A stretch of 60,722 nt of DNA, counting the filler, from Bipalium vagum (lineage: Eukaryota): the NCBI GenBank assembly GCA_037834085.1. It is 3 parts of 3 records of this genome, joined end to end, with 100 filler letters (N's around TTAATTAATTAA, not from the genome) between each part and the next. Parts side by side here need not be neighbours in the genome. Positions count along the whole stretch, not along the records: positions 17,554 to 43,691 come from JBBMKC010162370.1; 2 more parts are not named here. One strand, given 5' to 3'. The notes under the pieces are model-generated. The model worked only from the letters and a program-made list of their open reading frames with translations, had not been told where the DNA came from and made no database searches. Below are positions 17,554-39,099 of the stretch, one piece after another (the first letter of the stretch is position 1; each line of letters starts with the position of its first letter). The translations under genes and the position numbers were made by a program.

Positions 17554-17941
17554 GAACAAAATTATGTTTAGTGATGAAAAATCTTTTGATGCAGATGGTC
17601 AGTTTAATCCACACAACGACGTCGTTTATGTTGTGTCTAGATAAGATGCAAATTTTTTCCCAAGAGAAGGTATCCTTTGAAAGTGATGGTATGGGTTGGA
17701 CTGACATATCAGGGTCCGACGAAACCTGTATTCTTAACGATATATATATATTTATATTAAAAATATAATAAAAAAATAAAAATTAGAAATGAAGAAATAA
17801 TAATACATAAACTGATGACAGTAAAAAGATTGAACTGGGAAGGAATTAAGTCACTTAAAATAAAAATTACGCCAACACGAGAAAGTAACTAAAGTAGAAA
17901 ATAGTATAAATACATAGCAGAAAATCATAAATTCGCCTTTT
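17554..17941 (+). repeat. 388-bp duplicate of 27187-27574
   Basis: Appears identical by eye at offset 9633; the ORF track gives the same 65-aa peptide at 17571 and 27204. Confidence 0.92.
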
Positions 17942-21552: not shown

Positions 21553-21762
21553 TTAGTAATCACATTCTGTCAGTGCTGATCTCTTTTCTTGTTCCAACTG
21601 TTTGCTTGTAATTTCTAACTTGGAGCGCGCAAATTCATCAATTTGTAAATGCTCCACAATGTACCAGTGTCCTTTCCTTATTGTTACAGGAAAACTAAAA
21701 AATACATCTTTTGGCGCATCATACTGACCTTTGCTGTGGACAATCATTGAGGTCCAGTCAGA
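21553..21762 (-). CDS. MDH1-like protein, terminal exon
   Basis: tttcag acceptor, phase 0. SDWTSMIVHSKGQYDAPKDVFFSFPVTIRKGHWYIVEHLQIDEFARSKLEITSKQLEQEKRSALTECDY* matches the cytosolic MDH C-terminus (SM...G.Y..P....SFPV). Confidence 0.93.
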   Translation of the reverse strand, partial: SDWTSMIVHSKGQYDAPKDVFFSFPVTIRKGHWYIVEHLQIDEFARSKLEITSKQLEQEKRSALTECDY

Positions 21763-22379
21763 CTGAAATCATGAATTAAATTAATCTTTCAATATCTTAC
21801 TAATATATCGTTTTTAATGCACGTTTTAATACAAAATTAAATTCTCTACAGATTAATGGGCTTTCTATTATTAATAATAAGATTTTCTCACATGTTGAAA
21901 AATTTAAGAATTCTACCATAACATTATCTGGCTAATATTTTTCCACATCTCCATAATTCTTTACATTCTCTACTGATTGTTTGCTATTGGTCGATTGAAG
22001 TGATATTCGAAAGGAGTGAAGACTATATTAGGTTTCTACAAGATGAGGCTAGACGTTGTTATGCAAAAATATCACTATTTCCTGTCTGACAGATTTTTCT
22101 GGTTGACTTGTTGTGGTTTTGAATAAACTACATTATCTTAAGAACTACTAGTAACTTTTTTTCTAAGATTCAATAGTTCATGGTATATAATACCTTTTTG
22201 ATCCTATTATAAAAACAAAAAAACTTCAAAGGAAAATTGGGTTTATTGATTAATTTATAAGTTAGCTAGAATTAAACCATGGTCTTTCATGTTTAAAATT
22301 GTTAACACAAATCCACTTTATTCTTCATAATTTTACATAAAACTATTTTTATAAATAATAAAATATTCTGAATACTAAC

Positions 22380-22673
22380 AGTTCCATGCCAAATATCATT
22401 AGAATGGTCCACAATTGCTTTTGCTAAGGACATATAATAACCGATCATCCCGGGCCCACGAAAATTATTATCTGCAGATCTGCTTTGAATACTGCGAATA
22501 AAATGGTTTTTAATCCAGTTGTCATTTTTAATAGCTTGACGGATTGGAATTTCTTTATGGTCAGGTAGTTTAACCAATGCATAAGATATGTCTGGAAATT
22601 TAGTATCACTATGATTACCCCATATAATCGACCTTCTCACATTATTACAAGGTACACCTAATTGAGCTGCCAG
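22380..22673 (-). CDS. MDH1-like protein, exon with catalytic His (WGNHS)
   Basis: gtag acceptor and ACT|gttagt donor; 294 nt, phase 0/0. LAAQLGVPCNNVRRSIIWGNHSDTKFPD...MSLAKAIVDHSNDIWHGT. Confidence 0.93.
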
Positions 22674-23049
22674 CTACTTTTGAAACAGTATTACGAATTA
22701 TATTACGATTCTTATAATTAAAATTTCAAATATATAAATTTGTACAAAAATAAAAAAATTTGGTCAATTCAATCTGCTTAATCAGAATATTTCTTTCATC
22801 GGTATTTAATTTTTGAATCATTTATGGTTTCTTAAAAATGTAACTAAAAGCTTCATCCGAATTCTTTTTAATACGAACTAAATTTCATGACCAATCGTGA
22901 TTAAGTGTACAATTAACAGTTCAAAATGAAACTAATGAAATCAAAAATGAAACTTATTAAATTATACAAATAAAACCAAATTGATATTACATTATAATGA
23001 TGAAATTAAAATTAAAAGCTCAAAACTTTATAGAAAATCTTCAACGAGG

Positions 23050-25070
23050 TCTTTCCATTGAAACATAGAATAATAATAATTTTCTACGCGATTGGTGAAT
23101 CCAATATTTTTTTAGTGGTCACAGTTTATTTTGGACTATAGGCAATTATTTCAAGTGCCATCATTCGGAATTCTGTTGCCGGCAGTCCCCCAATTATTTT
23201 CATATATGCCATCAAGTGTGGCTTTCTTAATGAAGCTTATCCTTCACCACAGCTTTAAAAATACTCCATTCAAGGTCTATCTGGTTCAATAAGTTGAAAG
23301 AATACGGTGCAAAGCAAATAACTTTAACATCTTCGTTTTCTTCGACAGATATCTCCAACTGACTCTGCACAGGAGCTTTGTCAATAACAAATGTGGCTGA
23401 CTTAATGTCTTCTGCATTGCATTCAGATATTGATTGCCTGTAGTCTTCCCCCTTATAAAACCCCAGTTTACATTATAAATTCAATAGTCTTTCATTATCT
23501 TTATTTAGGACTGTAAATGGTATAGAGTTTAACTATTCAGATTTCATTATCATCTTCGAACCGCTTAAATGAGAATGCTTAAAATAATACATGTATATAT
23601 CCATTTAGAAAATGAAGCTGACCAGAATGATGTTATAGTGATAATAGTAATTATTTTTTGATATTTATTATTCACGTTTTCTTGTATAAAGAAACTGGTG
23701 GACAGGTAAATATACCTTACTACAAAAGTAAATATATATAATAATATATTATAATATAATATATATAATAATGATAAAAATTATAAATAATAATATTAAT
23801 AACATAAATGCTTAGAACTAAAAATTACAATCAACAGGAAATGTGGTTGATTGGCTGCAGAATTACATAAATCGAAATATTGATGGTTATAAATTAGTTC
23901 CAGAAAACCATCGAAGAATACCGAATTCTGAAATCTTCAATTTTATTGTTTCTTTAAGTTAATATTTGTGCTCCGTATATGTTTTACTTTAAAAAGTACC
24001 TTTCTTTATTATTTATGATTTCATTTTTTTTATTTAATTGTAGTTACTGTGGTTGTTGAATAATTCAATATATATAATTAAAGTAATTAATATATATAAG
24101 ATTTTCAATTAGATAAATAAAATTAAGCACCGAGTAAATATGGAATAAAAATACTAATTAAAAAGAAATGAGAAAAGTAAATAAAAAAATTGTGTCGAGT
24201 GGAAAGCATTACTACTTAATAATTGATGTATTAAAAATTGAAAATGTTCCTTTTTTTAATATTATTAAAACCATTTTCACGTAGTCTGGTGGCTCCATGT
24301 CACTTGAGTAAGCCGCACGAGGAAGAACTTTCCAACTCAAAGAGGAAAAATGGTACACGGTAGTCTTTGATATATGTGATCAGGATTGTCATTCAGAAGA
24401 ATAACATGCTTTTATCCAAAGACATTAAATTTTCTATTTTTTTAAGTGCTTATTTAAGGTGATTCATTGGCTTAAATATCTTTATGATCTGACTGTTTCA
24501 GCAACTCATAGTAGACTACTACCAGATAGTACCACCAAATGCAAAACCAAAATTTGGTTGCTTGGATATTAACTTCTACAATAACCTTTTTACCTGAAGG
24601 AACCTAGTATTTTATGTTTGAGTTATTATTGAAATATATAGATTTTTTCATGCTCCATAACTATCTGGCGCAAAACGCCCTTCTTAAATCTTGTTAGGAG
24701 AGATACACAATTTACGTAACAAATGTTATTATTCTCCGAAGTAAGACTATGGAGACACCCATCTGTAAGATTTTGAAATCCTTCCTTACTGTTTGACTCA
24801 GTGGAATATTGTCTATGTAATTCCAATTTCCTATGATTCGTACTACATGGATTTTCAATCAACAAATTGTGAACTTCTTTATCTGCAATTTTTTTGATTA
24901 AACAGGTCAATCGACAATTGAAAAATCAAGATTTTTGAATCTGAATCAGCTAAATCATTTTTGTGATAATTTATCGCTCTTCAAATCTTCATCTAAAGGA
25001 GAAATAACTATATTTCTAGCATCTAACGTTTTCTTCAATTGGAAGGCAATTAATAAGCAACGCCTTATGC
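23050..25070 (-). mobile_element. IS630/Tc1-superfamily transposase remnant, interrupted
   Basis: About 23200-23470 reads FVIDKAPVQ...CFAPYSFNLLNQIDLEWSIFKAVVK (like DNA..H...LPPYSP.LNPIE..WS..K). ORF 24626-24910 (LIENPCST...DGCLHSL) resembles the HTH. That both pieces belong to one element is inference. Confidence 0.55.
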
Positions 25071-25878
25071 ATTTTTGGGATTTCATTTGAATTTTCCCTA
25101 TTTGTTTGAAATATTAAAACAATTTTATTTATATGTATTAATTTATTTTAATATTTATTAATAAGAGATTATCTTTAATTTAAAATCATCTCATTTAAGA
25201 TTGTGACTTTGAGACATCAGCACCTTTTTAGATATCAACAACTTTTTGACATAAAAACGTATTTTAATTAATAATACATTTCATTGATTGCTGCCTGAAA
25301 TTATTATTTTTCATCATTGTTGGTAATATTATTATAGCTGTCTTAATAGATTCTCTTTTGAGCCGTGTTTAGGCTAAGTCGAGAATGGTTTCTCAATTTT
25401 GATAGGGTCCTAGTTAGCCTTCGTAGGGAATATACAGTGGTGGCCATTAAATGGTACCCAGATTGTCTTATTGTGTGACTTATTTGCCAATGAAGTTATT
25501 ACTGAACACCACTGTGATAAAAATGAAGGGGTTTTGCAACAAAATAAAACAATCATTGCAAAAATAATTACGAAAACCAGTCCGACTATCTGTTCAGAAA
25601 AAATAATACAATTCTTTTATGAGCAAAGTAATTATCTTAGCACAACTCGAGAACAAAATATAATTAAGCTCTATTAAGAACACTTCTTTCTCCGTTCCTC
25701 TTTTTAGCAAAATCAATCACTTTTAGTCCTATTAGCACAAAACGCAATTATCAATAAGGTCTTTTAGAACAAAATGTATTATTATAATTATTATTATTCA
25801 AAATCCACTAGTATGATGTATTAAATTTTACACTCTAACAATAGTTTATAGATAATTAATTAAAATCTATTGTATTAC

Positions 25879-26177
25879 CTCTGCCTGAGCTCTGTTATTA
25901 TCCAATCTTATAACTCCTGTGAAATTCTCTACTGGAATATTGGGAGCATATTTTGACATTACCAAACAATTTGTGTTTACTGGTCGACTGCACATTATTA
26001 TTTTGGCTCGCTTATCTGCATACTGATTGAGAATTTCTCCATGCCTTTTGTAGTATTTTAAATTTGTTCGAAACATGTTGATGTCATAATTAACGTTTAA
26101 GTCATTTACTGATATCATCATATAAATGATTTGTGCATCTTTGTAAGCTTCATTTTTCTTGGTCGTTACTAACAATT
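25879..26177 (-). CDS. MDH1-like protein, exon with mobile loop and RLD..R motif
   Basis: ttcaag acceptor and GAG|gtaata donor; 299 nt, phase 1/0. (E)LLVTTKKNEAYKDAQIIYMMISVNDLNVNYDINMFRTNLKYYKRHGEILNQYADKRAKIIMCSRPVNTNCLVMSKYAPNIPVENFTGVIRLDNNRAQAE. Confidence 0.92.
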
Positions 26178-26220
26178 CTTGAAATTTTTCAAAATTATTT
26201 ACATTCTTTTAAAAAATCTA

Positions 26221-26310
26221 CTATTATTATTATTAATATTATTATTATTATTATTATTATTATTTTATTATTATTGTTTTATTATTATTATTATTATTAT
26301 TTATTAGTAT
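26221..26310. repeat. (TTA)n microsatellite
   Basis: Directly visible; similar imperfect arrays at about 3965-4045 and 59570-59608. Confidence 0.9.
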
Positions 26311-27119
26311 TATAATTAGTAATACTGTTATTATTTTCATATTAGCATATAATTATATAAAAACCTTGGAGACTATTATACATTTATTCAATGCCAAGAG
26401 AAAAGTAATAGTCAAAAATATTTGAAATAGTAATTAAAATGATAAAAATAATATTTGAATAATATTCGAAAGATTTTGAAATTATTTTTAATGAAATCAT
26501 AAAATTTTATATTGTTTAGTAAGTTAATATAAAATTGATCTTTTTAAAATATTAATTGGAAATTTACTTTAAATTTTATTATATTTTCAAATAATATTAT
26601 TAACAATTAATTATAATTTAATTAAACATTTTTCAATTAAAATTTGATAATATTCTCATTTACAATATTAAATTCATTATAAGTCTAAAAGTGGAAAATA
26701 GATTTCATATGTAAATAGATTTTGAGAGTAAAGGGTTTTGCTTGAGAAGTATAAAGTGCTTTCTAAATAGCCATTTGTAAGCTCAGAAGAATTTAATCCA
26801 TGTAGTTCATTATATACAGATTCAATACATTTCTAGAATTAGAGAATATTTATAAAAACTCAAGGGATTTGTTAATATAATCTGATTTCTAAGAGAATTA
26901 AACATTTTATTTTACAGTTATAAAATTGATTATTTAATAAATATTTATATTATTTTTTATCAGAAAATGATGAAATTTTGATTTTAAGTATATATTTTAA
27001 GCAATATTAATCATCTCGTATCAGTTATTCACAATTTTTATTTTTAATTTTTGAAAAAAGAAATTATTATTTTTATTAATAATAATTACTTTTTATTGAT
27101 TGTTTATTATATAATGAAA

Positions 27120-28170
27120 AAAGATTATTCATGAGACGCAGTAGAAACGATATCAGCAGCAAAAAGGAATTTTCTTTACAGGCAGTGAACAAAATTATGT
27201 TTAGTGATGAAAAATCTTTTGATGCAGATGGTCAGTTTAATCCACACAACGACGTCGTTTATGTTGTGTCTAGATAAGATGCAAATTTTTTCCCAAGAGA
27301 AGGTATCCTTTGAAAGTGATGGTATGGGTTGGACTGACATATCAGGGTCCGACGAAACCTGTATTCTTAACGATATATATATATTTATATTAAAAATATA
27401 ATAAAAAAATAAAAATTAGAAATGAAGAAATAATAATACATAAACTGATGACAGTAAAAAGATTGAACTGGGAAGGAATTAAGTCACTTAAAATAAAAAT
27501 TACGCCAACACGAGAAAGTAACTAAAGTAGAAAATAGTATAAATACATAGCAGAAAATCATAAATTCGCCTTTTTTTTACTATTGGACGATCAGTATGGT
27601 ATGGGTTGGACTGACATATCAGGGTCCGACGAAACCTGTATTCTTACCGATAAAAACATCTTTTGATACAAGATTTTATATATCAAATGTACTTCCAATC
27701 GTTATATGGAAGGGAGTTCATTGGAAAGGATTTCATATATCAGCAGGATGGTGCTATCTGTCACAGAAGCAAAGAAACGATCACGGCTTTCAAAAAGACT
27801 GGTATTTCAATAATAGGTTCAAAGCATTGGCCACAAAATTCACCAGATCTTTGTTCTCTTGATTTTTTTTCTTTTGGGATGAAGTATCAAAGAGATTGAA
27901 AACAAAAAATTGAAAATCGTACAAAACTGATTGAAAAAATTAAAGAAACAATTGCAGAAATTCCATTAAATATGTATCGCAAAGCCATCGATTCCTTTCG
28001 ACAAAGAGTTTTGGCCATAGACAGGTACAAAGGAGGTTAAATAATAAACTGTTTTAATTAAATAAATTTTGGTTTTATTCTTTATTAAATACTTTAATTG
28101 AGTTAATTTAACATTATGCTATCTATGTCAAACATCATTCAAAGAATTATCATTCTTTATTGGCCACCCG
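27120..28170 (+). mobile_element. maT (DD37D) Tc1/mariner-superfamily remnant, 5'-truncated, with internal insertion
   Basis: FSDEKSFDADGQFNPHND; QQDGAICH...WPQNSPDLCSLD with 37 residues counted between the second and third Asp; right end ...TTCTTTATTGGCCACCCG. Confidence 0.85.
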
Positions 28171-29399
28171 TCAAGCGCCAGTTGATTATTATCATCAATT
28201 TTTAATGTACATGAATCGCAGTAAGAAAGTGATTGAGAAAAATGTGTATCACAATTCATCAAAAAGTTATTTAATAAACCATTTTTTTTAATTTTCTGAA
28301 TTTAATGGGTTACCTAAAATTCTTCCATAATTTATCCGTATTTATTTTTATTTTGATACATATCAGAAATGTTTAATTCTTATTAATTGTCTTCTTAATT
28401 ATTGGTTTTTTATTTTTCTCTTGGATTTTAATTTTTCGGTTTAAGTCTAAGGTTCTTGAAATAATTGCATTAATTTAAGCAACAAAAAAGAAAAATGTCA
28501 CATTCTCAATACATCATTATAAACATTTACTTTAATTTTACAGAACATTGCAATTAAATCTGACTTAAGCTCAATTTAAATTTAATTAATCAGATATTTC
28601 TACAATCTTTCGGAAAAGATTTTCAGTATTTTTAAACAGAAAATACTGTCGTATGATAGAACAATCAATGAGATTGCATACAAGAATCATTGTTTCCACT
28701 AATTTCACTTTGAATATTGGTCTTTTATATTTTGAACAGATCTTAGTACATTTGGCAACGAAACCACAATACGATTCACAAAGTTGATTTATTACTTCGA
28801 GTCTTGTGTTTAACAAGAAATGCAATGGATATGTCGAGATAAGTTACTTTATCAATTTATTATTTAGTTTTCCCACAATTTGTCTTTTTCTTCTCTTCAA
28901 TCAATAATATTCCATTGCTTATTACTTAATCATAATTTTATTCTATTCTAATTTTAATTCTATTTTGATAAAATGCTTTCTAATTAAATTTCGTTAACTT
29001 GAATTGAAAAGAATAAAATAGTGATATAAAATATGAAATTATAATTTATAAAAAAAAATTTTCTAAAGTATTAGGTCAAATATGAAAAAACAGTCGTATT
29101 GGAGAAGTGAACCAGTGGAGAAAAAAAATTGAATGAATTTCTTTTTCTTGGTTTTTAATTAATTAATATTTATTAATACTTAATAATCATTATTATTAAA
29201 TCGATTTTATTTTCTGTTCTCGATTTTATTTGGTGATAATTTAAAAATCTCCATTCGATTATCTTGATTTTATAATTTTTATTCTGAAAAATCATCTATT
29301 TTTACTGATTGGTATATCAATTAGTTATTGATCGCTTTTTAAATAGAAAATAAAGTTGATTGTAATTATTTTTATTCATCACTATAAGAGCACGTTGGA

Positions 29400-30400
29400 A
29401 AAATTGGTGACAGGGCTAGAAAATTTTGAGCTCGAGATTATATATAATATTAACAAATTAAATTACTTTATTAATTAACTACATGATCATCAATCCTCTC
29501 TACAATTATCCCCAAAAGTTCTAATTACGGTTCAAACCAATGCTGATATAAATCTCTTGGTTTTTCTTGGAAAAGGTCCGACTTCTTCATCAAAATTAAA
29601 CATTTTACCACTTAAACAATTATGTAAAGACGGCGACAAATAAAAATCACAAGCACAATATCTGGATAGTATGATGGATATTGGAGAGTTTTTTATCCCA
29701 ATTTTTATAGTTTTTTCTCACTTCGCACAACGCGAAGTCTTGCAAATTCTTGGTGAAAGACTATTTCATTTCGATAGTTCAAAGTCCAGCGCACCATTGA
29801 GTCAAGTGAATTACTCACAGTAGATCTCTGTCGTTATTGTTTCACCATATTGGTGGAATTCAAAATCAATAATTCCTTCCTAGTCTAATAAAATCACCAC
29901 AATACATTCATTGGATGTAGGTCAGACCTTGCGGTCTTGTATACTCTTTCCAGGTACTTTTCAATCGTAGGTTATTGTACAGAATCCTGTAAACTTTTTA
30001 TCGTGTGAGACTAATCTGCTCAAAATCAGTTTGTTTTTATTGAGTAAAGTAAATGAAATAACAAAAATCTCAAGGTTCAATTTATCTGGAACCCATCAAT
30101 CGAGCTTGAATATATATCCTAGATTTATTAGGTGGTGAAACGATGTCAAAATGTAGACATTCAGAATGTGGTTATATCAACGAACAAACCACATTCTCAT
30201 TGATGAAGGAAGGTCATCCAGAAATGGGTAGATTTTTAAAGTAAAGTCCCTACTTCGAAATCTTGCATACCATTTTTAATAGATTGGAGAGAAAAAACAA
30301 CATCTAAGTAAATGAATTTAATGTTTTTACTCATTATTCCAAGGTTCACGCAACAAATGCAAAAGTATTTGCAATTTTTCGATATTCATTTTTTATATTA
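29400..30400 (-). mobile_element. mariner remnant
   Basis: Reverse complement gives WVPDKL, SDLHPMN and GIIDFEF..YGETITTEIYCE-like motifs with many stops. Confidence 0.7.
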
Positions 30401-30519
30401 TTGTTCAAATGTTAAGCACTTAGTTAAAACAATTTTATATTATGTACCTAATACTATTGGATACAAAATTATATATTTAACGCTTGAGAGATAAAAGCAT
30501 TTCATAATAACAAATGATA

Positions 30520-31258
30520 TATTAAAATCAAAGGCCCTTGATTTTTCCGAAATTTTAGTGCATCATCTGGGTGATTAGAATCGTTCAAACGAAGACATGA
30601 AATCAAATCCTACAAAATAAGTGGCGAGTAAGATTTTATTGATGGAGATGTAGTATCAAACTTCCATATGTCAATTAATAGCAAATTAGGACAATATAAT
30701 CCAAATGATATATTTAACTTTAATGAGTTAAGAATTTTCTATAAAGAGCTGCCTGAAAGATAAAATGATAACTTTCCTGCAAATGGAAAAAAATTTGGAT
30801 CCTTTTTAGAACGAGGGCTCTTTTAGAAATGACATCTTCTTTGAAAATGCCAAAGTTTTTAAAAATATCGATGTTCAAAATACTTATGACGAAGAAGATC
30901 ATATTGAAAAAATATATATCAGATAATGTTTTCCCTATATTTCATATTCTGAAGCATTGATATGCCTTAAAAATCTTGAGATGTGGATTATTCAAAAAAG
31001 GCCCATTAAATTGGAACGTCAAGACACCGTCAAATCTCATTTATTATATTGAAAGAAGATAACCAGAAATATAATTTTGGATTACTTTCCAAGGAAGAGC
31101 TTACATTTTAAAAGAATAAATTTTTAATTTTTATGAGTCATAACTTATGATACAATCTTAGAATTATGTATTTTATCCTGTGTATGTTAAACATTTTCTT
31201 ATGTGACCAATTGTACAATTTCGGTCCCACGATCTTCAAGTTAAACAGGTTCAACTGC
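30520..31258 (+). mobile_element. pogo/Tigger remnant
   Basis: FSASSG*LESFKRRHEIKSYKISGE...YNPNDIFNF; TIR-like end GTTAAACAGGTTCAACTG. Confidence 0.75.
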
Positions 31259-31504
31259 TTGTTGTTTTATAAAAACCAAAAGATAAAAATGTTTAATGTT
31301 AACTAATTTTGTAATCAAAATAATATAGTTAATAAAAAAATTAAAAACCTAGTATCTTAATGAAAAATTTTTAGTGCACATGAAAGATTTACCAAAAATG
31401 TATTAATAGCTATAATTTGATAGTTTAATGAGAAAACTGAATTTAAAATCTTATGTATTAATGAAGGGCAATTTCAGAAATTTTTTATTTATCATTCAAC
31501 AAAC

Positions 31505-31601
31505 CTTTTAATAAAGGAAATCCACTGTCCTCAATTTCCATTTCAAAAGCCTGGACAAGAGATAAATGTTGTGACCTCTCCAAAAGATGAAGAATAATTG
31601 G
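31505..31601 (-). CDS. MDH1-like protein, 97-nt exon (beta-B / alpha-C)
   Basis: tttag acceptor and G|gtttgt donor; phase 0/1. PIILHLLERSQHLSLVQAFEMEIEDSGFPLLK aligns to MDH1 [32 protein letters not shown]. Too short for the ORF track. Confidence 0.92.
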
Positions 31602-31936
31602 CTAAAATATGCAAAAGAATACTTCTTTTTCAACATGTAAATAGATAATATTACATTTCTATCCATTTGTGATGAAAATGTTTGTCATTAATTATTCATC
31701 ACCTGTTACGCGAAATAATCTTATTTTATTTTAAACATGAAAAATATAGAAAATATATAAATGAAAAATATTTATATACAAAACAATTAAATATTCAATT
31801 TTTGAGTAAAGGATTTTATAATATTTACTTGAAGGGATAATAAATTCTGATACTTACAATTTTTAAAATTTTCATGATTTCAAAATTGTAATTTTTTTAA
31901 AAATTTTAAATACAAAAGTTAAAATATATTTATAAA

Positions 31937-34900
31937 CAGTATGAACTCTCTAAATCGACAAAAATGAAACCAGCTAAAAAAGTGGCAAATTTTAGAAAGT
32001 ATTATTATCCAATATCTTATTTACTATAATAAGTGTTTATGCGTAAAGCTTTAATTAATTATTTCAAATCTAATACAAATTGATATGCATCAAAGTCGAA
32101 ACTAAACTACTAAGCTTTATTTTTTTAAAGATCCACGTCTCTAAATGTTTGTACTTTTCATTTTGTTTCAAAGCCTTGCTTATTTTATCTATTCCAAATA
32201 TCTTATTTAAATTTATATGGCTGATTAAAATAGTTTTTAAGACTTTGCAGAGCTTTGTTACTCTTCTTTTGAGATAAAATGGTCTCTTATATTATCTTCT
32301 TGGATACTATTCTCTTCACTTTCTAATGCACAATGTGTTTCCGCTAGGTTGTTCTTTTCACAATTCTCTAAGAATATATAATTTTCATCATAACTGAGGA
32401 CAGAGAATTCATCTTCAAGAAGTGAATCTAAAATTGTAGTCTTTGAAAGAAATTCATCAGAATACAAAGATAAATCCTGAATTTTCTTCCAACCGGCATG
32501 ACTAAAACAACTTATAATTGTTTCTTTGAGATATCTTCCCATGCAAAATGCTTATTGTTATTATAAATGCTTAGAATTATTGTATCTCTGATATTTAATT
32601 TTTTGTATGCCGTAAATATGTCTTCACCACATTCAATCATTTCAATAATATCCCACAACTTTTTATTCTAAAAATGTGATTTAAAACCAAGTGTTGGATA
32701 ACAGAACTTGAATTTCATGACAAGAAAAAAATTTTGATGCTTTAAATTCGACACATTTTTCTACTTTACCAAATTGCATGACTTTTTCGGCTATTAATTT
32801 ACCAGTATGAATTGGTCCTACTTGCTCCAAGTTATCTATCAAATTTGATAAGTGGCGATTTTTTTCATATTTGATTGTTGATATTCTGCACATAGTATTA
32901 AATTTGGAATTCTCTTAAATTCTGTGTTTATTCTTTCGAATGGGATTTATTGTTCGGCTTGAAATTTCTTTCTTAAATCTCACTGGAAAGATATTTGCAA
33001 CTGTATTATCAGGTATTGTATTATGTTGAAATATCTTAAAATTTCAATTTTGCAGTTTTGGATAATTTTATATACAGTCAACTCTCATTAATCCGAAAAC
33101 TACGTAGTCCGAAAAAAAATTATTTATTTCGTCAATTTTCGAACGTTTCCAGATAAATTTGATTCATTAATCCGAAACTTCATGATCCGCAATCAGAAAG
33201 CTCTTTTTTGAATTAAATTTCTAATATTTTTTAAAAGTTTCAGATCAATGTTGTTGAAATATTAAGCTTTTTTACAATTTTAATTTACTTAAATTAAATA
33301 TCCATATGGCTAGAAAAAGAACAGAAATTACAAGTCATCAAAAGGCGAAAATTTGTGCAATAAAAGAGTTAAAGAAAATGTCGCTGAGTGAATTGTCTCA
33401 AATTATCAGAAGAAAATTAAACCTATACCTAGTAATTTCTACGTTATCAGAAATTTTGAAAAATAAAGAGAAACTTACTTTAAACAACTTCGAAAATTCA
33501 TTCTCTGCTTTTGAATTCATTGACCGAATGAATGCGATAAGTGGTTACATGACTGATGAATTATCATTACAAAACAAATGAATTTGAACAAAACTAAATG
33601 TTAATGACATGCAAATTCAGTAAAGGATGGCTAATTAGATTCAAAAATCAATTTAATCTGAAATTGAAAGTTCTACATGAAGAATCAAATTCAATAAATG
33701 ATGTTAATGTTTCAGCCCATATAAAAAAAATCGTTGAAAAATTTACAGGAATTGACCCTGGAGTTATGCTGAATATGGTTGAAACTGGAATTTTTCAAGC
33801 ATTTCGTACAAGAAGTATTTGATCAACTGAAAGAAAAGAAATAAAACAATCTAAAGTTAAGGTAACCATAGCTTCATGTTCAAGTGCTAGTGGATCAATT
33901 AAAATTACACCCTTTGTTATTAGACATAGCAAGAAGCCAAGATGTTTTAATGGATTTAATGTTGCAAGATCCTGTAATTACCACGTAAATTCTAAAGCAT
34001 GGATGACCACCAATTTGTGAAAGTTTTTATGCAGCATCTTGATGATGAATTGAGAAAATAAAAAAAATTATCTACTTCTTCATAACGTTACAAGCCACAA
34101 CCTGAAATGTTTTCAGAACATTGAAGTTATAATGCTTCCGAAAAACTCAACTGTTAATCTTCAACCCATGGGTGCAGGTATAATAAAAAATTTATTGCAT
34201 TATTACAGAAAAAAGTTAGTAGTTGATTACATGAACTCTCTTGATCAAATAAAGGCCTTTGTTTTTAATCATCAAAAGCCATATTGATACTTCAAGAAGC
34301 TTGGGTAGATGTGAAAGAAGAAACCATAAAAAAACTTGTTCAAAAAGGTTAGGATTATTTCAGGTCTTCACGGATCTTATGCTGAAGAAAACTTGTCATC
34401 AGATTCCGTTCTTTAGACACACAAGAATGAGTTGGACCGAATAATGATTGAAGAGAATATGATTCAAACAGAAGACGTCATTTACGATGATGAAATCATT
34501 ACACTGTGTCAAGAAGAATACACTGTTTAGTGCTGAAGGTGATCAGGTCGATGACAGTTACATAACTTCAAGCAATTTATTTCTTGCAATTGAAATTTTC
34601 ATCAAAATAAGCTTTAATAAAAAAATGACCAATGATAAAGTAAAAAAATTAAAAGAAGTCGAAGTTGATTTACAGAAATTCATTCAAAAGAAAACTTTAT
34701 AAAAACTTTGGATGATTCTTTATATAAAAAATTTCCTTTTTCCTAATAATTTCATCCTTTATTTAGGAATTATATAGATTTTCAATTATTTCATTGTCCG
34801 AATTAATTCACAATCCGAAAGGAAATCGATTTCTAATTTTTCGAACTAATAAATTTTCCTTTTATTAAACATTATCTAAATTTTAAATAAATTAAAACTT

Positions 34901-35031
34901 CTAAAATAAAATAAAAATTGATATATAATTTGTGTATTGTTAAAATTTATTGGCGAATTATAGAAATTTTACATATAAAGATCTGAAAACAGGCGGTTTA
35001 CAGAGAGTGGCGGATTAGAGAGGTTATACTG
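31937..35031 (-). mobile_element. pogo/Tigger element (outer), interrupted by a second Tigger
   Basis: Imperfect TIRs CAGTATGAACTCTCTAAATCGAC and reverse complement CAGTATAACCTCTCTAATCCGCC; minus-strand remnant ETIISCFSHAGW. Confidence 0.7.
33075..34855 (+). mobile_element. pogo/Tigger element (inner), near full-length decayed transposase
   Basis: TA|CAGTCAACTCTCATTAATCCGAA left end; MARKRTEIT, FSKGWLIRFK, LNMVETG, SKKPRCF, NSKAWMT, LPKNSTVNLQPMGAGIIK motifs; right TIR eroded. Confidence 0.88.
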
Positions 35032-35199
35032 TATATAAGAAAAATATTTTAGAAATCTGTTTAATAAATCTTACAAAAAAATTAATTTTTCTAAAAACTT
35101 GAAATTAATATATGATATTTATTAGGTTTTAATTAATTTCCGATTTGATAAAAACAACAGTATTTATAAAATAATATATTCTGTAAAGTTTTTTTGCAG

Positions 35200-36050
35200 A
35201 TATATACTGCTTCTTTATATATAAAGAAATCTTCGCTGAAGGCTATCGAATATTGATGGAGACCAGACGATGCTTTCCCTTCAGAAAGTGCGGGTTGAGA
35301 ATGGTTTCAGTGATTCAAAAGTGATGATTATGATGTACTGAAAAGTCAATCTCAGACCAGCCTAGAAAGTTAAAAATTCAGATTTGGAAGTATTATTGTA
35401 GGTTGACTCGACTCTCACTCTGAAGAATATGGGAAAATATTAATATCTGTTCACCAACTATTTCACATCGTTTGCGCAATGGGAAAGATGTAAAAAGAAT
35501 GAAAACGGGTTCCATTTAATTTAACAAAAAATGCAATTAAGAACCGTTTTAACACCTCAGTTTCATTTGTTTTTAGACACAAGTGAAGAGTTTTCTTTGG
35601 CGATTAATAACTGGGATGAAAACTTTATCTACCTCGAAAATCACAAACCGAAAAAGGTCATGGATAAACCTAGGTTTATAGATCCAATAGGATCAATTCT
35701 AAAATGTAATATCCACGACAAAAAGTAATGCCCTGTATTTGGTATAATCAAGGTTCTATCACAGAAAGAGATTATCACAGGAGATCAGCACAAATAGTAA
35801 TTAATTAAATTTTTTATGCAAAATAGACAGTAATTAACCAAAAATCTATTGTAATGCAATGCCCAGTCACATGTCACAATGTGTTAAAGCAGTGATGTCG
35901 GGATTTAACTGGAGGTCCCACCTCACACAGCCTAATCTCCATGACCTGACTCCTTCCGTTTGCTACCTTTTTGAAATTCAGCTTTTGCCAGAAAGATGGT
36001 TAAAAGTATTGGAAAGTGGAGGAAAATATTTTGATTGATTTATTTATTTT
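35200..36050 (+). mobile_element. mariner remnant
   Basis: VPFNLT, TGDENFIYLEN-like, NIHDKK.MPCIW and WEVPPH...SP.DLTPS-like motifs; frameshifted. Confidence 0.75.
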
Positions 36051-37221
36051 AAATGTAAAATAAATATTCTTTGTTACAAGATCGACGGAAATTAATAAAA
36101 GGCCTAATAAATCACTTAATATTATTTAATGAAAATAAGATTTAACTATTGAAATCTAACTTATAAGTAAATATTTTTGTTTTATTATTTTAAAATAATT
36201 TTAAGAATGAAAATCAATTTAATTATAAACTACAAACATTTATGAAAGAAAATACACATTTTCTATAGGATTAATGCAGCATAATGAATATATTTGATGC
36301 CTTTGGTAATTTGAAGAATTAAGTATTATTAGAGCCAGGTTTCTGAAATCTGAAGTATGCAGCAAAATTTATTCATATTACAACTGTTCTTTGAATGCCA
36401 GTGTTTATTTTATACTCTTTAATTGAAGATTATTTTATAAACTTCTATAAATTGTAAAAGATTTCCAAACAAAAGCAAAGTAATCGCAAGTTGTTATGAA
36501 ATATCAATAGAAGTTTTTGGAATCTTGAAAATTATATTTTTTTGAATATTCCTTGCTTTAATACTTATTTTGTAAACATCTTGATTCGAAAAATATTTTA
36601 GTTCCTCTCGGATTTTAAAATAAGCCAAATTCAAATGGTGATCAAGAGAATCTTGTTTTAAATATATATAAAACGGCGATTTCCCTGTTTCTATCATTTA
36701 TTTTGATGTCTTATAGTAAGAAGTTGTGATTGTTGGCTTCGAATATTGTGTAAAATTTCGGTTTGCTTAAAAAAATTTAAAATTTACTTTGATGAATGTA
36801 GTCTTATTACATTTCCTTAATTATAATCTCCATATGTATAAAATTTTGTTTGTAGACATTTAAAATAGACAGGTTTTCTTTCATCTTTATGCCGTATACT
36901 AAATCGTTAACTTTGTATAACAATATATCTTTAGATTCAAATTCAAAATCTTCCTTTTCATATTTACAATAGTTTCAAATTTTACTTACTGCACATGATA
37001 AAGGAAAAATTATTGTATTTAAGAAATAATATTATCCTTAATTATATAGTTCTTTGCATTTTGCATGAATAAATTTTCAATTAATTTTATTTTAATTACT
37101 TAACTACAATTTTTCAGGTTTTGTCTTAAAAGTAATACAATATTAAACTATTTGCAAATAACTAATAATAAATGAAAATTTAAACCTCAAAATATCATAT
37201 CAAATATTTCGATTTAATTAC

Positions 37222-37314
37222 CTGTTCAATTCCAAATATGTCACCATTTAGAATACTGGTTACTATGAATCTAGCTGAAGGATGGGACGCACCCGAAATC
37301 AATATTCTCAAAGG
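37222..37314 (-). CDS. MDH1-like protein, first recognisable coding exon (Rossmann beta-A / alpha-B)
   Basis: tttag acceptor and CAG|gtaatt donor; 93 nt, phase 0/0. PLRILISGASHPSARFIVTSILNGDIFGIEQ aligns to MDH1 [31 protein letters not shown]. The start-codon exon lies upstream and is unresolved. Confidence 0.88.
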
Positions 37315-38499
37315 CTAAATATATAATTTTTTAAATTCTAAGATAAAATACTGAAAACCAATTTTTCCATTCTATTTAAATTAATTTTCTAAGCGAACTC
37401 TTCTTTTTAGTGAATCGCTTAAACAACTAAAATTAAATTTATTATTAATGAATACTTAAAATTAAATATCTTAAAATAATTCTGTTTTGCAATTAGTGAC
37501 GTTGTCATTTGAATATCATAAAAAGTTTTTTATATATAGTAAATTTTTAAAATATTGATTGTTATTAAGTAACTTATAATAATTACTTATTAAATAACTT
37601 TGATTCAAAATTTTAAACACATTTAGCTTTTAAAGAAATCTTTACATTTTATGAGCTCAAACAAAGCAATAAGTCAGCAAAAACAGTAAACTAAAACTAT
37701 GGATATTTTTTCTCTATTAATAATTTACGTAAGATATACGTTTATAATACTATAATTGTTTGTAAACATTTTAATTCTTTTTAGAATATATTTGATTAAT
37801 ACAATTTGTCTTATATGTAATGGGAAAATAGGTATTCATATATAGATACACAAAGTGATCCGATTGTCATGACTATAGCAAGTAAATGGATAAACAAAAT
37901 CAGCAGCCAAGATCAAAAATCCAAATTCTACACACATCAAAAATTTTGCTTTATTTTTACAATTTTTTTCTTTTGCATGTTAATATGAATTTATAAAAAC
38001 AATTTAATAATTAAATAGATTAATATTAAAAGTTAGAAAAAACAAGTAAAAAGATTTTCGGTTAATATTTATTTTATGTAAAACCAATACTTAATATTAA
38101 GAATAAAAAACACAAATTGCTATTGTTTAAATAAGGTAACTATCTAATTTTTAGCTTATATTTGATATTTAGTTAGGGCATTTGATAGACATTTCAATAT
38201 GATCTGTTTAAATTAGGTAATTTTATGGAATCATAATTAATTTTGAAAAAAATGTGAATAAGATGTCTTAAAACATTGCTCATAAAGGGAAATGAAAAAA
38301 CCCTGATTGCACTGGCACTAGAATGTTGTTTCAGATGCTTGACTTTGGTAATTGATCTAAATTATTAAATTACAGACTCTGTAATCCATTGGCAATCATT
38401 TCTGATGCTTCATAATTGATAACTTATAGCTATAAAATATACGTTTTAAATGTGTTTTATACGTCAGAACCGAAAATTCTTTTCAGCGTATTAGGAGTA

Positions 38500-38990
38500 C
38501 CCATAAGTAATCAATTATTTAAGTTTCAAAAAAAATTTGAATACTTTTATTTTTAATCGATTATATAATTTCCATCGTTCTCTATGAACTTTTGCCACTT
38601 TGTTGGAAGTTTCAATTCCCCAGCCATAAAAATCTGTATCCTCTGAAGAGAAATATGATTATAGGTGAGTTCGAACATCATCGGCATCTTTGAAATTTTT
38701 ATTCTTTTTATGCTCCATGGACCGGAATAAATGAAAATCAAATGGCGCTATGTCTGGAGAATATGGGGATGTGGTAAAACTTCACCATTTCTTTGTCTGC
38801 ACAAGAGTTGTGCAAATTGTACGCCGTTGATCTTAATTCATTTCCGACATTACACATGGCACCTATATACACTGCCTGTAAGCCTTACCGATTTCTTTAA
38901 GATGTCTTTTAACTGTTGACCAAGTAGCTTGAAGAGTTTTTGCTATTCGTTTACACCAGTGCCTTTTGAGTACCTTTAACAACCATCGAT
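38500..38990 (-). mobile_element. mariner C-terminal remnant
   Basis: EVLPHP-YSPDIAPFDFHLFRSME and KLPTKWQKFIENDGNYII. Confidence 0.85.
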
Positions 38991-39099
38991 TAAAACTGAC
39001 ACTACATATTGTAATCAATTAAATCTGACAACACATAAAAACCTGAGATTAAGAAATCAAAGATCAATTTCTATCAATACATTAATTATATACTAAATA

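What the first reader, a model, noticed from the sequence alone, without database searches (positions are those of the whole stretch)
21553..37314. Intact but rewired cytosolic MDH1 paralog: candidate pseudoenzyme or new-specificity dehydrogenase
Seen: five phase-consistent exons give about 330 uninterrupted codons co-linear with MDH1. Kept: catalytic Asp and substrate Arg (RLDNNR) and catalytic His (WGNHS). Lost: the mobile loop GSMPRREGMERKDLL, which reads ISVNDLNVNYDINMF here, so both loop arginines are gone. GNPANTN has become SRPVNTN, and the [21 protein letters not shown] region has become IQSRSADNNFRGPGMIGYYMSLA. Established: the loop Arg determines malate/oxaloacetate specificity, and changes there produced trichomonad LDH and trypanosomatid aromatic hydroxyacid dehydrogenase from cytosolic MDH. 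Inference: an open frame maintained among transposon debris implies selection for a non-MDH function.
Basis: partly seen in the sequence, partly recalled or inferred. Interest (0 to 1): 0.8.

Follow-up and report, generated by a model that had tools for sequence, protein, structure and literature searches.

The report
Divergent MDH1 copy, probably non-catalytic
This animal genome carries, besides two normal cytosolic malate dehydrogenase genes, a third intact but heavily altered copy that has lost the residues needed to bind malate/oxaloacetate and probably NAD, so it is most likely a non-catalytic "pseudoenzyme" kept for some other role; whether it is expressed could not be tested.

Summary
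On the minus strand, five exons (37222-37314, 31505-31601, 25879-26177, 22380-22673, 21553-21762) with AG/GT splice sites and compatible phases give 330 codons plus a stop, co-linear with cytosolic MDH1.

The five exons contain no ATG. A candidate 4-codon start exon lies 56 nt upstream, where a canonical copy has its own.

The same genome has two canonical MDH1 genes with the same exon layout. They are 70% identical to each other and 44-46% identical to this copy.

An exon-4 fragment from another organism (P0001, 71% identical) shares the same derived insertion and rewritten substrate helix. The rewiring is therefore inherited and both frames are open. Neutral simulations almost never keep the frame open.

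The locus is not MDH1B (14-16 bits against 66-81 for MDH1).

Best reading: a selectively maintained, fast-evolved MDH1 duplicate that cannot be an MDH and is probably non-catalytic. A new-specificity enzyme or a recently dead gene remain possible. No RNA data exist, and no dN/dS, fold or complex prediction was possible.

The parts
37359..37370 (-). Candidate start mini-exon, ATG GAA AAA TTG (M-E-K-L), followed by the non-consensus donor GTTTTC and a 44-nt intron
   Evidence: Read from the sequence. The ATG lies 56 nt upstream of exon 1. Canonical copy 2 has ATG TCT AAG|GTAAGT 59 nt upstream of its exon 1. This is inferred and there is no transcript evidence.
37222..37314 (-). Coding exon 1 (31 codons), the Rossmann beta1/alphaA region; GAAGQIAY reads GASHPSAR
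   Evidence: Acceptor tttag|CCT, donor CAG|GTAATT, phase 0. Aligns to MDH1 residues 4-34.
31505..31601 (-). Coding exon 2 (32 codons plus 1 nt); LLD reads LLE, and M-E-x-x-D and FPLL are kept
   Evidence: Found with the canonical copies' exon 2 as probe. Acceptor tttag|, donor AAAG|GTTTGT, phase 1. Aligns to Thermus MDH 35-65.
25879..26177 (-). Coding exon 3 (2 nt plus 99 codons), with the mobile loop without arginines, SRPVNTN, and RLDNNR kept
   Evidence: Pfam Ldh_1_N scores only 24 bits, below the 27-bit cutoff. TIGR01758 scores 75 bits against 171 for the canonical copy.
22380..22673 (-). Coding exon 4 (98 codons), with WGNHS kept and the substrate-binding helix rewritten with a 2-residue insertion
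   Evidence: Pfam Ldh_1_C scores 42 bits. The ortholog fragment P0001 is 71% identical and shares the derived state.
21553..21762 (-). Coding exon 5 (69 codons plus TAA stop at 21553-21555), the C-terminal domain and the best conserved part
   Evidence: Acceptor ttcag|. Pfam Ldh_1_C scores 42 bits. It is 51-57% identical to the canonical copies. PDB MDH E-value is 1e-13.
33306..34287 (+). Decayed pogo/Tc5-type transposon inside intron 1 (weak HTH_Tnp_Tc5 and DDE_1 fragments)
27187..27486 (.). Repeat element inside intron 2, an exact copy of the contig start 17554-17853, with a third 86% copy of an 85-nt subsegment at 27596-27680

Best explanation
The locus is a DNA-level (intron-retaining) duplicate of the cytosolic malate dehydrogenase gene MDH1. 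It evolved very fast after duplication and has since been kept as an open, spliceable gene in at least two related organisms. It keeps the MDH fold and the buried Asp159/His187/Arg162 cluster. It has lost both mobile-loop arginines (Arg92 and Arg98, both now Asp), Asn131 (now Arg), the substrate-helix residues (Gly231, Ser241, Ser242, Ala243) and the central dinucleotide-binding glycine (Gly14, now His). It therefore cannot act as a malate dehydrogenase and probably binds NAD(H) poorly or not at all. The most likely role is as a non-catalytic MDH-fold protein (a pseudoenzyme) that works through protein contacts. The likeliest contact is dimerisation with itself or with one of the two canonical MDH1 proteins of the same genome, as MDH1B pairs with MDH1 in ciliary radial spoke 3. 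Shown here: gene structure, residue changes, paralogy, the ortholog fragment, and the improbability of neutral decay. Inferred: loss of catalysis and of cofactor binding, dimerisation, and expression.
For: The gene has 330 codons with no stop and eight canonical splice sites. Its exon layout matches the genome's two canonical MDH1 genes, which keep every motif. Identity is 44-46% to those copies, which are 70% identical to each other. P0001 from another organism is 71% identical in exon 4, at E 1e-38 against 1e-16 for the next hit. It shares the 2-residue insertion, the rewritten helix and the exon end, and is open throughout. My locus is the best match to P0001 in the own genome, at 65%, with no closer copy. 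The two form a 100/100 clade on a stem of 1.25 changes per site. Neutral substitution-only drift keeps the frame open in 0 of 300 runs at 70% or 50% identity. For drift only since the split it keeps the frame in 16 of 1000 runs, and in 3 of 1000 with splice bases intact. Of 71 columns at least 90% conserved in canonical MDH1, 46 are kept. The 25 lost cluster in the P-loop, the mobile loop, the V-V-V-G-N-P-A strand and turn, and the substrate helix. Residues were mapped on 7rm9 and 9fqr. Arg102 and Arg109 (LDH numbering) are the only loop residues that touch the substrate, and Arg109 is retained even in the LDHs that evolved from MDH in that study (PMC4109310). The MDH1/MDH1B structural heterodimer is a precedent (bioRxiv 10.1101/2025.05.19.654877).
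Against: There is no transcript evidence, because the only run holding the locus is DNA-like. The start codon is not secured and the candidate mini-exon has a weak donor. Differences between the two orthologs do not avoid canonical-conserved columns, which also fits relaxed constraint. Introns are 10-100 times longer than in the canonical copies and full of transposon remains. Retention of the Asp/His/Arg catalytic cluster could mean that some chemistry survives. Loss of NAD binding is inferred from one glycine, without a structure. No fold or complex prediction could be run on the spliced model.
Confidence: 0.5

Rival explanations
1. It is a neofunctionalised dehydrogenase. The active site has been rebuilt: loop Arg to Asp twice, Asn131 to Arg, and Ser-Ser-Ala to Gly-Tyr-Tyr. 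It would then be a redox enzyme for a different 2-hydroxy/2-keto acid or a non-acid substrate, perhaps with an altered cofactor mode.
For: The catalytic His187/Asp159 pair and the carboxylate-binding Arg162 are kept, and His is also kept in P0001. The family has repeatedly produced new specificities from MDH, including trichomonad and apicomplexan LDH and T. cruzi AHADH. The frame has been held open by selection.
Against: In the precedent examined here (apicomplexan LDH, PMC4109310) the Arg109 equivalent is retained, and AHADH remains NAD-linked; here Arg109's equivalent is Asp and the central Rossmann glycine is His. The rewritten helix differs at many positions between the two orthologs, which is not what a newly optimised pocket should show. 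TIGR01756 (protist LDH) scores lower than cytosolic MDH on every exon.
Confidence: 0.2
2. It is a recently inactivated, unprocessed pseudogene. A formerly functional divergent paralog is no longer expressed or spliced but has not yet picked up a stop or frameshift.
For: No RNA evidence is available. The only candidate start exon has a non-consensus donor. Introns are very long and transposon-laden, whereas the canonical genes span about 2 kb. The former active-site segments are freely variable between orthologs.
Against: There is no stop, frameshift or broken splice site in 330 codons and 8 junctions. Neutral drift over even half of the ortholog divergence leaves the frame and splice sites intact in 0.3-1.6% of simulations. 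Exon GC is 35.5% against 25.9% for the piece.
Confidence: 0.2
3. It is the organism's ortholog of MDH1B, the radial-spoke paralog.
For: MDH1B is likewise a divergent MDH1-type protein with a structural role.
Against: Exons 3 and 4 score 66 and 81 bits against solved MDH1 chains but only 14-16 bits (E 0.08-0.5) against the MDH1B chains 9fqr_Xq and 9d2f_F. The intron layout is identical to the genome's canonical MDH1 genes. There is no coding potential for an N-terminal domain in the 6.4 kb upstream, and an ATG mini-exon candidate sits at the canonical position.
Confidence: 0.03
4. It is an ordinary, active cytosolic malate dehydrogenase isozyme.
For: Its best family match on every exon is eukaryotic cytosolic MDH.
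Against: Arg92, Arg98, Asn131 and Gly14 are all replaced. Per-exon scores are about half those of the canonical copies and cannot reach the family cutoff.
Confidence: 0.02

Closest known systems
Cytosolic malate dehydrogenase MDH1 (TIGR01758; PDB 7rm9, 5mdh, 4mdh)
   Same: It is the best match on every exon. It has the same length, the same exon layout as the genome's own MDH1 genes, and the same fold motifs and Asp/His/Arg162 cluster.
   Different: Identity is only 44-46%. It lacks Gly14, Arg92, Arg98, Asn131 and the RGAAVI-ARKLSS helix. Scores are about half of canonical. Introns are 0.6-5.6 kb and transposon-filled.
MDH1B (putative malate dehydrogenase 1B; PDB 9fqr_Xq, 9d2f_F), a radial spoke 3 strut that heterodimerises with MDH1
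   Same: It is a divergent MDH1-type paralog whose documented role is structural and exerted through pairing with MDH1. This is the working model proposed here.
   Different: MDH1B has an extra N-terminal globular domain and is far more remote in sequence (14-16 bits against my exons). The window gene is an independent, much younger offshoot of MDH1 proper.
Trypanosoma cruzi aromatic alpha-hydroxyacid dehydrogenase, and trichomonad LDH
   Same: These are cytosolic-MDH-derived paralogs without MDH activity that arose by changes in the specificity loop (PMC11461325; Steindel et al. 2016, cited there).
   Different: They remain NAD-linked enzymes. The window gene has additionally lost the Arg109 equivalent, Asn140 and the Rossmann glycine. 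TIGR01756 scores below TIGR01758 on all exons.

Membership tests
LDH/MDH superfamily (Pfam Ldh_1_N + Ldh_1_C) | C-terminal alpha/beta domain (PF02866) above the gathering score | tested here: met
   Exon 4 scores 42.3 bits and exon 5 scores 42.3 bits, against a cutoff of 22.6.
LDH/MDH superfamily (Pfam Ldh_1_N + Ldh_1_C) | NAD-binding domain (PF00056) above the gathering score | tested here: inconclusive
   Exon 3 alone scores 24 bits against a cutoff of 27, and exon 1 gives no hit. The whole domain could not be scored because the joined model was not searched.
Eukaryotic cytosolic MDH (TIGR01758 equivalog) | Whole-protein score above the curated cutoff (470 bits) | tested here: not met
   It is the best family on each exon, but exons 3-5 (266 of 330 codons) score only 74.7, 76.8 and 72.6 bits. 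The canonical copy's exons 3 and 4 score 171 and 141 bits. The remaining 63 residues cannot supply about 245 bits.
Eukaryotic cytosolic MDH (TIGR01758 equivalog) | Glycine-rich dinucleotide-binding motif G-A-A-G-Q-I-A/G | tested here: not met
   The motif reads G-A-S-H-P-S-A, aligned to MDH1 residues 11-17.
Eukaryotic cytosolic MDH (TIGR01758 equivalog) | Mobile-loop arginines (LDH numbering Arg102 and Arg109; human MDH1 Arg92 and Arg98) | tested here: not met
   Both align to Asp. Their role is taken from PMC4109310.
Eukaryotic cytosolic MDH (TIGR01758 equivalog) | Catalytic His-Asp pair and substrate Arg (His187, Asp159, Arg162) | tested here: met
   WGNHS and RLDNNR are kept.
Eukaryotic cytosolic MDH (TIGR01758 equivalog) | Asn131 (LDH Asn140) in the G-N-P-A-N-T-N turn | tested here: not met
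   The turn reads S-R-P-V-N-T-N.
MDH1B | N-terminal globular domain linked by a helix to the MDH domain | tested here: not met
   Exon 1 starts at MDH1 residue 4. An ATG mini-exon candidate lies 56 nt upstream, as in the canonical copy. Nothing in the 6.4 kb upstream resembles an N-terminal extension; it holds only mariner debris. A cDNA would settle this.
MDH1B | Closer in sequence to MDH1B than to MDH1 | tested here: not met
   Scores are 14-16 bits against 9fqr_Xq and 9d2f_F, compared with 66-81 bits against MDH1 chains.
MDH-derived LDH / aromatic hydroxyacid dehydrogenase | Retained Arg109 equivalent and intact NAD-binding motif with a changed residue at position 102 | tested here: not met
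   The Arg109 equivalent is Asp and Gly14 is His. TIGR01756 scores 61, 29 and 32 bits, below TIGR01758 on each exon.
Expressed protein-coding gene | Spliced transcript | not testable with these tools
   No RNA run holds the locus.

The most novel reading that the evidence does not exclude
The active site has not been lost but inverted. Two loop Arg to Asp changes, a new Arg at the Asn131 position and two new Tyr residues in the substrate helix, around a preserved His/Asp/Arg162 core, would create a pocket for a different (for example cationic or aromatic) ligand. The protein would then be a new-specificity oxidoreductase or a metabolite sensor conserved in a small animal lineage.
Probability: 0.12. 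Interest if true: 0.75.

Novelty: new variant of a known kind. Interest (0 to 1): 0.45.

Why it matters
Catalytically degenerate paralogs of core metabolic enzymes are an under-charted source of regulators and scaffolds. For MDH1 the only characterised case is the ancient MDH1B, recently shown to be a structural partner of MDH1 in cilia. If the reading here is right, this locus is an independent and much younger case that still sits next to its canonical parents in the same genome. It would be a natural experiment on how a dehydrogenase loses substrate and cofactor binding while keeping its fold and possibly its dimer interface. It would also warn annotators not to transfer the label "malate dehydrogenase" to such copies. 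The practical weight is limited until expression is shown.

Tried and rejected
- **RNA evidence:** The look-up of sequencing runs found a single DNA-like run and no RNA.
- **Word searches:** searches with exon 3 and exon 4 found no candidates. The third was not spent, because the index missed even P0001.
- **Metagenome scan:** a scan with the window/P0001 alignment gave only two 41%-identical canonical-type loci and no further ortholog.
- **Rate calibration:** looking for the canonical MDH1 of P0001's source among the hits failed.
- **Constraint test:** testing whether the orthologs' differences avoid conserved columns was not significant (Fisher p = 0.35).
- **Literature:** no paper pairs "pseudoenzyme" with an MDH paralog.
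- **Joined model:** Whole-protein Pfam/NCBIfam scoring, structure prediction, fold search and the MDH1 heterodimer prediction were therefore left out. Exons were joined only inside local scripts, for counting, identity, tree and simulations.
- **Readings rejected:** MDH1B ortholog, retrocopy (introns are present at the parental positions) and active MDH isozyme.
Full report
**What is there.** The piece (window 17554-43691, contig C162370 of a 440-Mb assembly in 272,664 contigs) is about 26% G+C. On the minus strand, open segments with MDH similarity lie at 37198-37314, 25870-26208, 22305-22673 and 21556-21768. The missing second exon was found at 31505-31601 by probing with exon 2 of the genome's own canonical MDH1 genes. 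Every boundary has an AG acceptor and a GT donor, and the phases (0, 1, 0, 0) fit. The exact exons are 37222-37314, 31505-31601, 25879-26177, 22380-22673 and 21553-21762. They total 993 nt, or 330 codons plus TAA, with no internal stop. Exon G+C is 35.5% against 25.9% for the piece. Introns measure 5620, 5327, 3205 and 617 nt. They contain decayed pogo/Tc5-type fragments (DDE_1, plus a weak HTH_Tnp_Tc5 match) and repeat copies; a mariner-type fragment lies just downstream of the gene.

**The start codon.** The five exons contain no ATG, and an in-frame TAG directly precedes exon 1. The canonical copy 2 solves the same problem with a mini-exon, ATG TCT AAG|GTAAGT, 59 nt upstream of its exon 1. 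The window copy has ATG GAA AAA TTG|GTTTTC at 37359-37370, 56 nt upstream. This is in phase, with a 44-nt intron, but the donor is non-consensus. It is a plausible start and remains unproven.

**Family and residues.** Pfam finds Ldh_1_C on exons 4 and 5 (42 bits each). It finds only a sub-threshold Ldh_1_N match on exon 3 (24 bits against a cutoff of 27). NCBIfam puts every exon closest to TIGR01758, eukaryotic cytosolic MDH, at about half the score of the canonical copy's exons (75, 77 and 73 bits against 171 and 141; whole-protein cutoff 470). The best PDB matches are mammalian cytosolic MDH (7rm9, 5mdh, 4mdh, 9fqr_Xp, 9d2f_E). In human MDH1 numbering from those alignments:
- **Cofactor side:** G14 to H, Q15 to P, I16 to S, G88 to I.
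- **Mobile loop:** R92 to D, R93 to L, R98 to D.
- **Turn:** G130 to S, N131 to R, A133 to V.
- **Kept:** D159, R162 and H187.
- **Substrate helix:** G231 to S, S241 to G, S242 to Y, A243 to Y, plus a 2-residue insertion.

LLD to LLE is harmless, since Thermus MDH has LLE. Against eleven diverse canonical MDH1s, the window copy keeps 46 of the 71 columns that are at least 90% conserved. The 25 losses cluster in the P-loop, the mobile loop, the V-V-V-G-N-P-A strand and turn, and the substrate helix. The fold motifs survive.

Arg102 and Arg109 (LDH numbering, equal to Arg92 and Arg98) are the only loop residues that contact the substrate. Arg109, Asn140, Asp168, Arg171 and His195 belong to the conserved first shell (PMC4109310). 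That the central glycine of the G-x-x-G-x-x-G/A motif is needed for close approach of the NAD pyrophosphate rests on my general knowledge of Rossmann folds. It was not tested here.

**Paralogs in the same genome.** Searching the whole assembly with PF02866 and PF00056 and reading the contigs shows two canonical MDH1 genes. One is on C214119. The other is split over C73856 and C140093. Both have intact GAAGQI, MPRREGMER or MPRKDGMER, GNPANTN, RLDHNR, WGNHS and RGAAVIAARKLSS motifs. Both have the same five-exon layout within about 2 kb. They are 70% identical to each other and 44-46% identical to the window copy. The window gene is thus a third, DNA-level duplicate and not a retrocopy. The genome does not depend on it for MDH activity.

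**A relative elsewhere.** The exhaustive search with exon 4 returned one outstanding hit, P0001. It is a 110-residue exon-sized ORF on an 807-bp ENA contig, 71% identical, at E 1e-38. The next hits are canonical MDH1s (fluke, flatworm, acanthocephalan, tick) at no more than 47% identity for full-cover matches (E 1e-16 or weaker). P0001 shares the 2-residue insertion, the rewritten helix, the retained WGNH and the exon end followed by GT. In my genome its best match is my locus at 65%, with no closer copy, so it comes from another organism. In a maximum-likelihood tree the two form a 100/100 pair on a stem of 1.25 changes per site. The canonical copies have branches of about 0.2. Other forks in that tree are unresolved, so I claim no parent copy.

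**Selection.** No ortholog DNA is available, so dN/dS could not be computed. I used substitution-only neutral simulations with the local base composition instead. They keep the 330-codon frame open in 0 of 300 runs by 70% identity. Drift over only half the exon-4 ortholog divergence keeps it open in 16 of 1000 runs, and in 3 of 1000 if the 16 splice bases must also survive. The exon-4 pair alone is weak evidence, because both frames stay open in 11% of runs. The simulations assume that exon 4 is representative of the whole gene, and they ignore indels, which makes them conservative. The orthologs' differences do not avoid canonical-conserved columns. Twelve of 34 such columns differ, mostly in the former substrate helix (Fisher p = 0.35). 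The old catalytic constraint is therefore gone there. This argues against a newly optimised pocket and also fits some relaxation.

**MDH1B.** MDH1B is defined by an N-terminal globular domain and forms a structural heterodimer with MDH1 in radial spoke 3 (bioRxiv 10.1101/2025.05.19.654877). The PDB holds MDH1B chains 9fqr_Xq and 9d2f_F. My exons 3 and 4 score 14-16 bits against them (E 0.08-0.5) and 66-81 bits against MDH1. The 6.4 kb upstream shows no N-terminal-domain coding potential. The locus is not MDH1B, but MDH1B is the best functional analogy.

**Verdict.** This is a real, intact, fast-evolved MDH1 duplicate, conserved in at least two organisms, that cannot be a malate dehydrogenase. 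The loss of the Arg109 equivalent, Asn140 and the Rossmann glycine goes beyond the known neofunctionalised relatives (T. cruzi AHADH and trichomonad LDH; PMC11461325). I therefore favour a non-catalytic pseudoenzyme acting through protein contacts (about 0.5), over a new-specificity enzyme (about 0.2) and a recently dead gene (about 0.2).

**Limits.**
- No RNA run exists for the locus.
- A metagenome scan found no further ortholog.

Noticed in passing
window 17554-17853 and 27187-27486 (also 27596-27680): The first 300 nt of the contig are an exact copy of a stretch inside intron 2. A third copy of an 85-nt subsegment, 86% identical, lies 277 nt further on. The ORF across it (MVWVGLTYQGP...) looks like a Tc1/mariner transposase fragment to me, but Pfam gave no hit. 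The contig probably ends in this repeat because the assembler broke there.
   Followed up: partly
G000:C214119 (L025) and G000:C73856 + C140093 (L024, L023): The genome holds two canonical, compact (about 2 kb) MDH1 genes that are only 70% identical to each other. The canonical gene is therefore itself duplicated, and one copy is split over two contigs.
   Followed up: partly
G000:C192094:310-801 (L007): An Ldh_1_C match lies inside an uninterrupted 451-residue open frame, unlike the exon-sized matches elsewhere. It may be an intronless LDH/MDH-family gene, a retrocopy or a bacterial contaminant contig.
   Followed up: no
P0122 (432 aa, JGI metagenome): This is another strongly degenerate MDH1-type protein from an unrelated source. 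It reads WGNKSS in place of WGNHS, has a rewritten substrate helix, and sits on a branch of about 2.4-2.6 changes per site. MDH1-type pseudoenzyme-like offshoots may have arisen more than once.
   Followed up: no
P0009 / P0151 (Pomphorhynchus laevis KAI0981349.1, KAI0981348.1): The gene model carries an N-terminal extension of about 175 residues in front of a canonical MDH1. It looks like a merged gene prediction (the N-terminal part was not scanned).
   Followed up: no
window 38518-39018, minus strand: Remains of a probable mariner-type transposase (C-terminal end and helix-turn-helix-like pieces, judged by eye) lie 1.2-1.7 kb upstream of exon 1, on the same strand as the gene.
   Followed up: no
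window 26198-26352: Long AT-rich triplet runs (poly-Asn/poly-Ile in translation) sit immediately upstream of the exon 3 acceptor. This may matter for splicing efficiency.
   Followed up: no
   Followed up: no
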